Under the pieces are notes generated by a model. That model saw nothing but the letters and a program-made list of their open reading frames with translations, did not search any database and had not been told where the DNA came from. A DNA stretch of 63,520 nucleotides, filler included, from Octopus bimaculoides (lineage: Eukaryota), in the NCBI RefSeq assembly GCF_001194135.2. It is 7 parts of 5 records of this genome, joined end to end, with 100 filler letters (N's around TTAATTAATTAA, not from the genome) between each part and the next. Parts side by side here need not be neighbours in the genome. Positions count along the whole stretch, not along the records: positions 1 to 17,615 come from NC_068982.1; 6 more parts are not named here. One strand, written 5' to 3'. Both the position numbers and the translations under genes were made by a program. This document shows positions 13,701-13,976 of the stretch, one piece after another (position 1 is the stretch's first letter; each line of letters opens with the position of its first letter).

Positions 13701-13976
13701 ACAGTATGTTACAGTCTGTCATACCGGCCATGATGAAATACCACAAGGTATAGAAAATACGTATTCGCCTTTATAAATTTATATTTTTAATCCTTTATAT
13801 TGAACACTCAATATTTCATATATTGAATAAGACATTCAATACTTCATTTCATTGTACCATCCATATTTTTTTATATTATATATTATATATTCCATATCCC
13901 ACATTAATTTTACAAGAATATAAATAAAAAAACATAAAAAACAGAGTTGGAACTCTTTTAAATAAAATAATATATT
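13701..13976 (+). repeat. AT-rich HHR-bearing repeat (probable PLE pseudo-LTR), copy 1 of 3
   Basis: Shares ...caatatttca...aataagac..tcaatacttcatttcatt...aacataaaaaacagagttggaa with 33480-33710 (+). A homologous AT-rich body lies at 38868-39145 (-). Confidence 0.8.
13726..13769 (+). ncRNA. Hammerhead-like motif, variant B (C-N-UGANGA core)
   Basis: ggc C A TGATGA aatacc acaa ggtata GAAA atacgtat TC gcc. Confidence 0.7.

What the first reader, a model, noticed from the sequence alone, without database searches (positions are those of the whole stretch)
13726..13769. Non-canonical hammerhead family with a one-base insertion in the core (C-N-UGANGA) and covarying stems
Seen: three diverged copies head the same AT-rich repeat. 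13726: ggc-CA-TGATGA-aatacc/ggtata-GAAA-atacgtat-TC-gcc. 39116-39077 (minus): ggc-CA-TGACGA-aggg/ccct-GAAA-ctcgag-TC-gcc. 33498: ggac-CT-TGAAGA-ttgc/gcaa-GAAA-gtatac-CA-gtcc. Stem II differs in sequence but pairs in all three copies, stem I changes from ggc/gcc to ggac/gtcc, and each stem III insert is a different palindrome. All three have an extra nucleotide between C3 and U4. This looks like selection on structure rather than decay. Inference: a dimer-dependent hammerhead variant of a PLE family. Variant PLE hammerheads have been described, and I cannot tell whether this core is among them.
Basis: partly seen in the sequence, partly recalled or inferred. Interest (0 to 1): 0.85.

Follow-up and report, generated by a model that had tools for sequence, protein, structure and literature searches.

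The report
Lone hammerhead-like motif, core insertion
A single 44-base sequence resembles the self-cutting "hammerhead" RNAs that animal jumping genes carry, but it has an extra base in the catalytic core; it is most likely a decayed copy or a chance look-alike, and the claimed new family cannot be shown from this piece.

Summary
The motif is at 13726-13769 (+), as described: GGC-C-A-UGAUGA-[A·AUACC-ACAA-GGUAU·A]-GAA-AAUACGUAUU-C-GCC. There are two corrections. The helix II pair next to the core is an A·A mismatch, not a pair. Helix I has only 3 bp.

This piece holds one copy only. "Three copies", "covarying stems" and "conserved insertion" therefore cannot be tested here.

The match is rarer than chance for one window. 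No hit came from 400 shuffles or 20 Mb of Markov sequence. The broad class "any one-base core insertion" gives p≈0.006 per window. That is not rare over a whole genome.

The architecture matches published invertebrate retrozyme and Penelope-like hammerheads: type I, GAAA box, 10-nt palindromic helix III, C17, and an AT-rich host element beside (TA)n. Two copies cofold into a double hammerhead.

The negatives are substantial:
- No Rfam hammerhead model matches, nor does a model built from four published retrozyme hammerheads.
- There is no G10.1-C11.1 pair.
- The insertion interrupts the CUGA U-turn, which tolerates almost no change.
- No Penelope-type reading frame, tandem copy or stable fold was found.

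Best reading: a solitary, probably inactive relic of a retroelement hammerhead (about 0.45). Chance is about 0.3, and a functional variant family about 0.12. Interest is low to moderate.

The parts
13726..13728 (+). Helix I, 5' strand (GGC); pairs with 13767-13769
   Evidence: Read from the sequence. Only 3 bp. The next two positions are C·U, C·U; an A-U/U-A/A-U run could follow after that 2x2 loop.
13729..13736 (+). 5' core box C-A-UGAUGA: C3, extra A13730, then U4 G5 A6 U7 G8 A9
   Evidence: This is the only C-N-UGANGA occurrence on the + strand. The contiguous CUGANGA box that defines hammerheads is interrupted.
13737..13752 (+). Helix II hairpin: A·A mismatch (13737/13752), 5 bp AUACC/GGUAU, loop ACAA
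   Evidence: The descriptor matches only if the closing position is left unpaired. A U·U mismatch at the same place occurs in the active axolotl HHR_Amex2 family (PMC7229834).
13753..13755 (+). G12 A13 A14 of the GAAA box
13756..13765 (+). Helix III: perfect 10-nt palindrome AAUACGUAUU (A15.1 to U16.1). As a hairpin it gives 3 bp plus an ACGU loop; between two copies it gives a 10-bp duplex.
   Evidence: It is the only one of 22 palindromes not made of TA repeats that is preceded by GAA.
13766..13766 (+). C17; predicted cleavage would fall between 13766 and 13767
   Evidence: Inference from hammerhead numbering; not tested.
13767..13769 (+). Helix I, 3' strand (GCC)
13702..13976 (+). AT-rich stretch headed by the motif: 275 nt visible, 22.9% GC, A-rich 3' end, cut by the N gap 13977-14141
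   Evidence: No second copy in the piece. Its fold is no more stable than shuffles, z = -0.13.
13652..13701 (.). (TA)24 microsatellite directly upstream
14142..14183 (.). (TA)21 microsatellite directly after the N gap. Together with 13652-13701 it brackets the AT-rich stretch, as expected for an insertion into (TA)n.
   Evidence: (TA)n is a reported target of some Penelope-like elements (PMC8557442). That this is an insertion is an inference.
16003..16054 (-). Second, unrelated hammerhead-like motif with an uninterrupted core. Layout: AUG-CUGAGGA-GAAUU(14-nt loop)AAUUC-GAAA-UCC(7-nt loop)GGU-A-UAU. It has G10.1-C11.1 but a weak 3-bp helix I.
   Evidence: 0 of 539 decoy cores hit in the strict form. 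There is no Rfam match, and it scores 3.6 bits with model R1.

Best explanation
This is a solitary, diverged and probably catalytically dead copy of a type-I hammerhead ribozyme. It is of the kind carried by animal non-LTR retrozymes and Penelope-like elements. It sits at the 5' end of a short, very AT-rich, retroposon-like insert in a (TA)n microsatellite, in a microsatellite-rich eukaryotic genome that looks cephalopod-like.

In the parent element such a ribozyme cuts multimeric transcripts after C17. Its helix III is a palindrome, so two copies pair to form a 'double hammerhead'. That is the active form of short-helix-III hammerheads.

In this copy, three features are read as decay rather than as a selected variant: the extra A between C3 and U4, the absent G10.1-C11.1 pair and the 3-bp helix I.

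Shown: the sequence anatomy, its rarity against nulls, the dimer-favouring palindrome and the AT-rich, (TA)n-flanked context.
Inferred: descent from a retroelement hammerhead, and inactivity.
For: 1. The layout is that of published invertebrate retrozyme hammerheads. Mussel has CUGAUGA-GUCU..AGAC-GAAA-CGCGCG-UC, and coral has CUGAUGA-GGCC..GGCC-GAAA-CAGUACUG-UC with a 10-nt palindromic helix III (supplement of PMC7229834). The candidate has GAAA-AUACGUAU-UC.
2. It is rarer than chance. There were 0 hits in 400 shuffles and 0 in 20 Mb of Markov sequence. 0 of 539 permuted cores hit in the same form, and p is about 0.006 in the broadest form.
3. A second hammerhead-core motif lies 2.2 kb away on the other strand, and no decoy core hits in its strict form. 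This suggests the genome carries hammerhead-bearing elements. The giant squid genome has 235 Rfam Hammerhead_1 loci, and Penelope elements are reported in cephalopods (PMC6962438).
4. The dimer minimum-free-energy structure is the double hammerhead.
5. The host stretch is 22.9% GC and bracketed by (TA)n. Retrozymes are low-GC repeats of about 170-400 nt (PMC7229834), and some Penelope-like elements target (TA)n (PMC8557442).
6. A mismatch at the base of helix II has an active natural precedent, U·U in axolotl HHR_Amex2.
7. Inactivity is expected. The CUGA U-turn tolerated no single or double substitution except the C3-G8 swap (PMC9901934). Natural insertions next to C3 slowed cleavage about 425-fold in 4 M LiCl (PMC3088659).
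Against: - No covariance model recognises it. The Rfam hammerhead families give nothing at E<=10, either in the window or in a 101-nt slice. Model R1, built from four published retrozyme hammerheads, gives no global match; the best local score is 1.8 bits.
- It lacks G10.1-C11.1, which Cervera and de la Pena list as highly conserved even in minimal Penelope-like hammerheads.
- Helix I has 3 bp, against 6 in all four controls.
- The monomer fold is not the hammerhead and is no better than shuffles, z = +0.70.
- The AT-rich stretch is not unusually structured, z = -0.13, unlike retrozyme circular RNAs.
- No second copy, tandem unit, reverse transcriptase or GIY-YIG remnant was found.
- A near-miss class with p about 0.006 per window will arise by chance about a thousand times in a genome of a few gigabases.
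Confidence: 0.45

Rival explanations
1. Chance resemblance. An AT-rich, palindrome-rich genomic stretch happens to place a UGAUGA word, a small hairpin, GAAA, a palindrome and three complementary flanking bases in hammerhead order. The match appears only once one inserted base and one mismatch are allowed.
For: - Markov sequence gives 0.25 hits per Mb of strand, which extrapolates to about a thousand in a genome of a few gigabases.
- 10-nt perfect palindromes not made of TA repeats are common here: 22 in about 15 kb.
- Every model-based test is negative.
- There is no thermodynamic signal and no second copy.
- G10.1-C11.1 is absent and helix I has only 3 bp.
Against: - The candidate has the most base pairs of any hit in its class: 13, against 10-12 for the decoys.
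- It also shows features the descriptor did not ask for and that are typical of real animal hammerheads: U7, C17 and a fully palindromic 10-nt helix III.
- A second hammerhead-core match lies in the same 17.6 kb. By rough multiplication of the two rates, chance alone would give both with probability of about 1e-5.
Confidence: 0.3
2. One reading: a functional, dimer-dependent hammerhead variant family. One nucleotide is bulged between C3 and U4, and the motif is kept by selection in a Penelope-like or retrozyme lineage.
For: - The helices, the GAAA box, the cleavage-site context and the dimer-forming palindrome are intact around the insertion.
- Natural hammerheads with insertions beside C3 (positions 2a/2b), after A6, in the GAAA box (U13a) and between A9 and G10.1 exist, and some cleave (PMC3088659; PMC4209133).
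- A helix II base mismatch is tolerated in the active HHR_Amex2 family.
This is unverified and lies outside this piece.
Against: - Only one copy is available, so there is no conservation or covariation evidence at all.
- The insertion lies inside the CUGA U-turn, where every tested single or double substitution lost activity apart from the C3-G8 swap. The nearest natural precedents, insertions 2a/2b, nearly abolish cleavage under standard conditions.
- There is no G at 10.1, which from general knowledge is part of the A9/G10.1 metal site.
- Helix I has 3 bp.
- There is no partner copy in cis and no Penelope-type reading frame.
Confidence: 0.12
3. Box C/D snoRNA-like element. AUGAUGA at 13730-13736 would be a C box, closed by the GGC/GCC terminal stem.
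For: Weak cmscan matches driven by the AUGAUGA word: SNORD104 at 10.2 bits (E = 4.8) and SCARNA7 at 8.9 bits.
Against: - Both scores are far below the gathering thresholds of 40 and 65 bits.
- There is no D box (CUGA) before the 3' stem, nor anywhere in the next roughly 200 nt.
- The 44-nt span is too short for a box C/D RNA.
Confidence: 0.02

Closest known systems
Type-I hammerheads of animal non-LTR retrozymes (mussel Mg353, coral Amil224; Cervera & de la Pena 2020, PMC7229834)
   Same: - Open helix I, a 4-5 bp helix II with a 4-5 nt loop, and a GAAA box.
- Helix III is a loopless palindrome of 8-10 nt followed by U-C.
- The host is a low-GC repeat a few hundred nt long.
   Different: - Those have an uninterrupted CUGAUGA, G10.1-C11.1 and a 6-bp helix I. 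They lie in tandem repeats, and their RNAs fold stably.
- Here there is an extra A after C3, A·A at the helix II base, a 3-bp helix I, a single copy and no fold signal.
Minimal hammerheads of Penelope-like elements (Cervera & de la Pena 2014, PMC4209133; Lunse et al. 2017, not readable here)
   Same: - Short helix I and a helix II of at least 5 bp.
- An unpaired nucleotide right after A9.
- A small palindromic helix III, implying action as dimers, with low intrinsic activity.
   Different: - Those keep CUGANGA (or the U3-A8 covariant) and a highly conserved G10.1-C11.1, and they lie in the pseudo-LTRs of elements encoding reverse transcriptase plus GIY-YIG.
- None of these is met here.
Axolotl HHR_Amex2 (about 60,000 copies; PMC7229834)
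   Same: A homo-mismatch at the base of helix II (U·U there, A·A here), a palindromic helix III, and better cleavage as a dimer.
   Different: Amex2 has a canonical CUGAUGA core and a 6-bp helix I, and lies in 350-bp tandem repeats.
Saltern hammerheads HHmeta/HHphage with insertions 2a/2b next to C3 (Perreault et al. 2011, PMC3088659)
   Same: Extra nucleotide(s) in the C3 corner of the core, described there as unprecedented and destabilising.
   Different: - Those insertions are 5' of C3, between helix I and C3. Here the extra base is 3' of C3, inside the CUGA turn.
- Those come from halophile DNA, were assayed in up to 3 M KCl, and were tested. This one is untested.
CChMVd and other hammerheads with an extra nucleotide between A9 and G10.1 (De la Pena & Flores 2001, cited in PMC4209133)
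   Same: A13737 can be read as that extra nucleotide.
   Different: Here there is also an unpaired A13752 on the 3' side of helix II, and no G10.1.

Membership tests
Hammerhead ribozyme (any type) | Contiguous 5' core box C3-U4-G5-A6-N7-G8-A9 (CUGANGA, or the U3/A8 covariant) | tested here: not met
   The sequence is C-A-UGAUGA: one extra base between C3 and U4. The canonical descriptor does not match here.
Hammerhead ribozyme (any type) | 3' core box G12-A13-A14, then the A15.1-U16.1 pair, then H17 (not G) | tested here: met
   GAA at 13753-55, A13756 pairing with U13765, C13766.
Hammerhead ribozyme (any type) | Three helices around the core | tested here: inconclusive
   Helix I has 3 bp. 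Helix II has 5 bp behind an A·A mismatch. Helix III is a 10-nt palindrome (3 bp plus a tetraloop as a monomer). The hammerhead fold scores -3.8 kcal/mol against a minimum free energy of -6.6. The fold is no better than shuffles.
Hammerhead ribozyme (any type) | G10.1-C11.1 closing pair of helix II (nearly invariant) | tested here: not met
   A13737·A13752, or A13738-U13751 if the two A's are read as bulges. Conservation of the pair is stated in PMC4209133.
Hammerhead ribozyme (any type) | Match to curated covariance models (the Rfam 15 hammerhead families) | tested here: not met
   No hammerhead family appears at E<=10 in the 17.6-kb search or in the 101-nt slice.
Hammerhead ribozyme (any type) | Self-cleavage after position 17 | not testable with these tools
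   Needs in vitro transcription of monomer and dimer constructs.
Animal non-LTR retrozyme hammerhead | Match to a model of published retrozyme hammerheads | tested here: not met
   Model R1 (coral, mussel, two axolotl sequences) does not find the motif at E<=10 in the window. The best score in the slice is 1.8 bits, local. The model rests on four sequences, so its sensitivity is low.
Animal non-LTR retrozyme hammerhead | Head-to-tail repeats of about 170-400 bp, each with one hammerhead | tested here: inconclusive
   There is no second copy in the piece. The stretch is cut after 275 nt by a 165-N gap that could hide more.
Animal non-LTR retrozyme hammerhead | Low GC (<45%) host repeat | tested here: met
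   22.9% GC over 13702-13976, against 36.4% for the window.
Animal non-LTR retrozyme hammerhead | Highly self-paired, stable RNA | tested here: not met
   -30.4 kcal/mol, z = -0.13 against shuffles. The element is truncated by the gap.
Penelope-like element hammerhead | Located in a pseudo-LTR flanking a reading frame with reverse transcriptase and a GIY-YIG endonuclease | tested here: not met
   There is no Pfam domain in the six-frame translation of 14142-16151 or in the ten best open frames of the window. The frame at 14202-14411 that looked like reverse transcriptase has no homologues. Not every frame of the window was scanned.
Penelope-like element hammerhead | Palindromic helix III that allows a double-hammerhead dimer | tested here: met
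   AAUACGUAUU. The cofold minimum-free-energy structure of two copies is the double hammerhead, at -23.5 kcal/mol.
Proposed C-N-UGANGA variant family | Several copies sharing the insertion, with compensatory changes in the stems | not testable with these tools
There is one copy in the piece. The closest relatives of a transposon protein reach only 71% identity or less.

The most novel reading that the evidence does not exclude
The motif is one member of a real, selected family of dimer-dependent type-I hammerheads. In this family one nucleotide is bulged between C3 and U4, inside the CUGA U-turn, and the G10.1-C11.1 pair is dispensable. The family would be carried by a short AT-rich retroposon of a cephalopod-like genome. 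That would be a core topology not reported for natural hammerheads in the papers I could read.
Probability: 0.12. Interest if true: 0.7.

Novelty: new member of a known kind. Interest (0 to 1): 0.28.

Why it matters
If it is only a relic or a chance match, it adds nothing beyond one more hammerhead-like site in an animal genome already expected to hold hundreds to thousands of them.

If the insertion were conserved and the RNA active, two things would follow. The CUGA uridine turn, one of the least mutable parts of the ribozyme, would be shown to accept a bulge. Current descriptors and Rfam models, all of which miss this motif, would be shown to under-count retroelement hammerheads. Both consequences can be tested cheaply once the source genome is searched.

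Tried and rejected
- **Rfam:** cmscan over the whole piece and over 101-nt and 121-nt slices gave no hammerhead match. The hits were microsatellite-driven miRNA noise and a weak C-box-driven snoRNA match.
- **snoRNA reading:** rejected, because there is no D box.
- **Other copies within the piece:** repeat finder, blastn at word size 7 and relaxed minimal-hammerhead descriptors found none.
- **Other copies elsewhere:**
  - An exact-pattern scan of metagenome contigs found nothing.
  - A pseudo-protein search with the open frame that runs through the element found nothing.
  - A scan for the host genome's SINE tail in the metagenome, prokaryotic-genome and viral collections found nothing.
  - A look-up of the window's own frame 13468-13746(-) was not on record.
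- **Sampling the same genome through a transposon protein** (5227-5658, minus strand): the best relatives reach only 71% identity or less, in unnamed ENA metagenome contigs. At the DNA level these are 70-75% identical over the transposon only. I abandoned this route.
- **A linked Penelope-type reading frame:** none found.
- **Lunse et al. 2017** (variant Penelope-like hammerheads) could not be read. Whether this exact core is listed there stays open.
- **Thermodynamic support:** none for the monomer, the element or the second motif.
- **Covariance model from four published retrozyme hammerheads:** it does not recognise either motif. The model is narrow, so this is a weak negative.

Full report
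**What is there**

At 13726-13769 on the + strand the RNA would read GGC-C-A-UGAUGA-A-AUACC-ACAA-GGUAU-A-GAA-AAUACGUAUU-C-GCC. In hammerhead numbering:
- G13726-C13728 pair with G13767-C13769 (helix I, 3 bp).
- C13729 is C3, A13730 is an extra base, and 13731-36 is U4-A9.
- 13738-42 and 13747-51 form a 5-bp helix II with loop ACAA. It is flanked by A13737 and A13752, which cannot pair.
- 13753-55 is G12-A13-A14.
- 13756-65 is a perfect 10-nt palindrome from A15.1 to U16.1.
- C13766 is position 17.

'aatacc/ggtata' hides an A·A mismatch at the position that is G10.1-C11.1 in almost all hammerheads, and the loop was omitted. Only this one copy lies in the piece I was given. No second copy of 13690-13976 exists in it (blastn at word size 7; repeat finder). 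No other C-N-UGANGA or minimal hammerhead motif turns up either.

**Is it more than chance?**

A descriptor that just fits the candidate has these parts: helix I >=3 bp, C-N-UGANGA, helix II >=4 bp behind one unpaired position, GAAA, helix III >=3 pairs, U then a non-G base. It gave 0 hits in 400 dinucleotide shuffles of the window and 0 in 20 Mb of first-order Markov sequence.

As a null that keeps the real sequence, I permuted the core letters into 539 composition-matched decoy cores and scanned the real window. No decoy hit. The true core hit twice: the candidate, and an uninterrupted-core motif on the minus strand at 16054-16003.

That class gives 0.25 hits per Mb of Markov strand, or 0.0077 per window. 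In the real window 3 independent decoys of 538 hit, each with fewer base pairs than the candidate (10-12 against 13).

The honest figure is therefore p of about 0.006 for one 17.6-kb window. That is notable for a single window. Extrapolated to a genome of a few gigabases, it means about a thousand chance sites.

**What it looks like**

The supplement of Cervera & de la Pena 2020 prints four cloned retrozymes. The mussel hammerhead is CGUCA-CUGAUGA-GUCU-UUUGU-AGAC-GAAA-CGCGCG-UC-UGGCG. The coral one ends GAAA-CAGUACUG-UC, which gives a 10-nt palindromic helix III.

The candidate's 3' half (GAAA-AUACGUAU-UC-GCC), its small helix II and its open helix I have the same architecture. My descriptor recovers all four controls. 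The axolotl HHR_Amex2 family needs the 'unpaired closing position' option, because it carries a U·U mismatch at the base of helix II. It still cleaves, and does so better as a dimer. The A·A mismatch alone is therefore not disqualifying.

Two copies of the candidate cofold into exactly the double hammerhead: a 10-bp intermolecular helix III with helix I formed between molecules. The energy is -23.5 kcal/mol, against -6.6 for each monomer.

The motif sits 24 nt inside a 275-nt stretch of 22.9% GC with an A-rich 3' end. (TA)24 lies upstream. Beyond a 165-N assembly gap, (TA)21 lies downstream. Low-GC repeats of about 170-400 nt are the hosts of animal retrozyme hammerheads, and (TA)n is a reported target of some Penelope-like elements. 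Cephalopod genomes are reported to carry Penelope elements, and the giant squid genome has 235 Rfam Hammerhead_1 loci.

**What speaks against a working ribozyme, or any ribozyme**

- No Rfam hammerhead family matches at E<=10, in the whole piece or in a 101-nt slice.
- A covariance model built from the four published sequences does not find the motif in the window. In the slice it gives only a 1.8-bit local match to helix III. That model is narrow, so this is a weak negative.
- The monomer's minimum-free-energy fold is not the hammerhead, and is no better than shuffles (z = +0.70).
- The AT-rich stretch is not unusually structured (z = -0.13), unlike retrozyme circular RNAs.
- Helix I has 3 bp, where all four controls have 6.
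- G10.1-C11.1 is missing. Cervera & de la Pena list it among the features that recur even in minimal Penelope-like hammerheads.
- The extra A lies inside the CUGA uridine turn. In comprehensive single and double mutagenesis this motif lost activity with every change except the C3-G8 swap.
- The nearest natural precedents are insertions 2a/2b on the other side of C3 in saltern hammerheads. They left only very low self-cleavage during standard transcription, and the rate in 4 M LiCl was 425-fold below a consensus hammerhead. An insertion after A6 also gave low activity, whereas U13a in the GAAA box was judged easier to accommodate.
- I found no report of a C3-U4 insertion, but the one paper devoted to variant Penelope-like hammerheads (Lunse et al. 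2017) could not be read.

**Linkage**

No Pfam domain appears in the ten best open frames of the window or in all six frames of 14142-16151. The frame at 14202-14411 looked to me like a reverse-transcriptase fragment, but it has no detectable homologue. The only recognisable transposon protein is 5227-5658 (minus strand). Some of its relatives carry the zf-RVT domain (PF13966), so it looks like a non-LTR reverse-transcriptase tail. There is therefore no sign of a Penelope-type reading frame, and no partner hammerhead in cis.

**Attempts to reach more copies**

All attempts failed:
- A protein-space search with the open frame that runs through the element.
- A look-up of the window's own frame.
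- Sampling through the transposon protein, which reaches only relatives of 71% identity or less in unnamed ENA contigs.

The central claims of the finding, a family with a conserved insertion and compensatory stems, therefore cannot be evaluated with what is available here.

**Weighing**

For a single copy three readings compete.

1. *Relic.* A diverged, probably dead copy of a retroelement hammerhead explains several things together: the architecture; the features the descriptor did not ask for (U7, C17, a full palindrome); the AT-rich, (TA)n-flanked context; and the second hammerhead-core motif 2.2 kb away. It also explains the three departures from consensus. I give it about 0.45.
2. *Chance.* This fits the negative model-based tests, the weak helix I, the missing G10.1-C11.1 and the genome-scale expectation. 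I give it about 0.3.
3. *A selected variant family.* The evidence does not exclude it, but nothing I could check supports it, and it runs against what is known about the U-turn. I give it about 0.12.

The box C/D snoRNA idea, raised by the AUGAUGA word, fails for lack of a D box.

**Verdict**

The motif is hammerhead-like and of the dimer type. Family status, covariation and Penelope linkage remain unshown. As it stands this is an ordinary instance of a known kind of element, or a look-alike of one. It would become interesting only if a genome-wide search shows the insertion to be conserved.

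Noticed in passing
window 16003-16054, minus strand: Second hammerhead-like motif, with an uninterrupted CUGAGGA core, G10.1-C11.1, a 5-bp helix II (14-nt loop), GAAA, a 4-bp non-palindromic helix III (7-nt loop) and A17, but a weak 3-bp helix I that includes a G·U. No decoy core or shuffle matched its strict form. 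Even so, Rfam gives nothing and model R1 gives 3.6 bits. It is unrelated in sequence to the candidate.
   Followed up: partly
window 322-376 and 13490-13544: Two copies (87% identical over 55 nt) of the 3' end of an interspersed repeat (..CCAGCATGGYCGCAGTCAAATGACTGAAACAA..), each followed by an A-rich tail. From memory it resembles the abundant octopus SINE; this is not verified. The exact pattern is absent from the metagenome, prokaryotic and viral collections.
   Followed up: partly
window 14760-14980 and 15548-15772; also 15086-15143 against 15775-15832: A roughly 225-nt segment repeated directly at a spacing of 788-792 nt (82% identity), plus a 58-nt inverted match (93%) between the two units. 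This looks like a local duplication or a nested repeat of unknown type; no Pfam domain lies in this region.
   Followed up: no
window 5227-5658, minus strand: Open frame of 144 aa, cut by the N gap at 4585-5226. Its relatives (48-71% identity, ENA metagenome contigs of unnamed eukaryotes) in some cases carry the zf-RVT domain (PF13966). This is probably the tail region of a non-LTR retrotransposon protein.
   Followed up: partly
window 7567-7705 and 7965-8103: Inverted repeat with 139-nt arms, 94% complementary, 259 nt apart, with a 32-nt tandem duplication (7753-7816) in the spacer. It looks like a foldback or MITE-like element.
   Followed up: no
window 14202-14411, plus strand: A 70-aa open frame (..FANDTGLLGLSEGDLQHALNGLAAEWCEVGMRVEVGKTETLVLTRK..) that looks to me like the YxDD region of a LINE-type reverse transcriptase. 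Neither Pfam nor the protein database gave a match.
   Followed up: partly
window 4585-5226, 8328-8714, 10991-11169, 13977-14141, 16152-16999: Five long N runs (a scaffolded draft assembly). The longest 'direct' and 'inverted' repeats listed by the repeat finder (D1, I1-I12) are artefacts of these N runs, and the long reading frames spanning them are not real.
   Followed up: yes
window 13730-13736: The AUGAUGA word doubles as a perfect box C consensus and draws weak SNORD104 and SCARNA7 matches. No D box follows, so this is a coincidence of the hammerhead-like box.
   Followed up: yes
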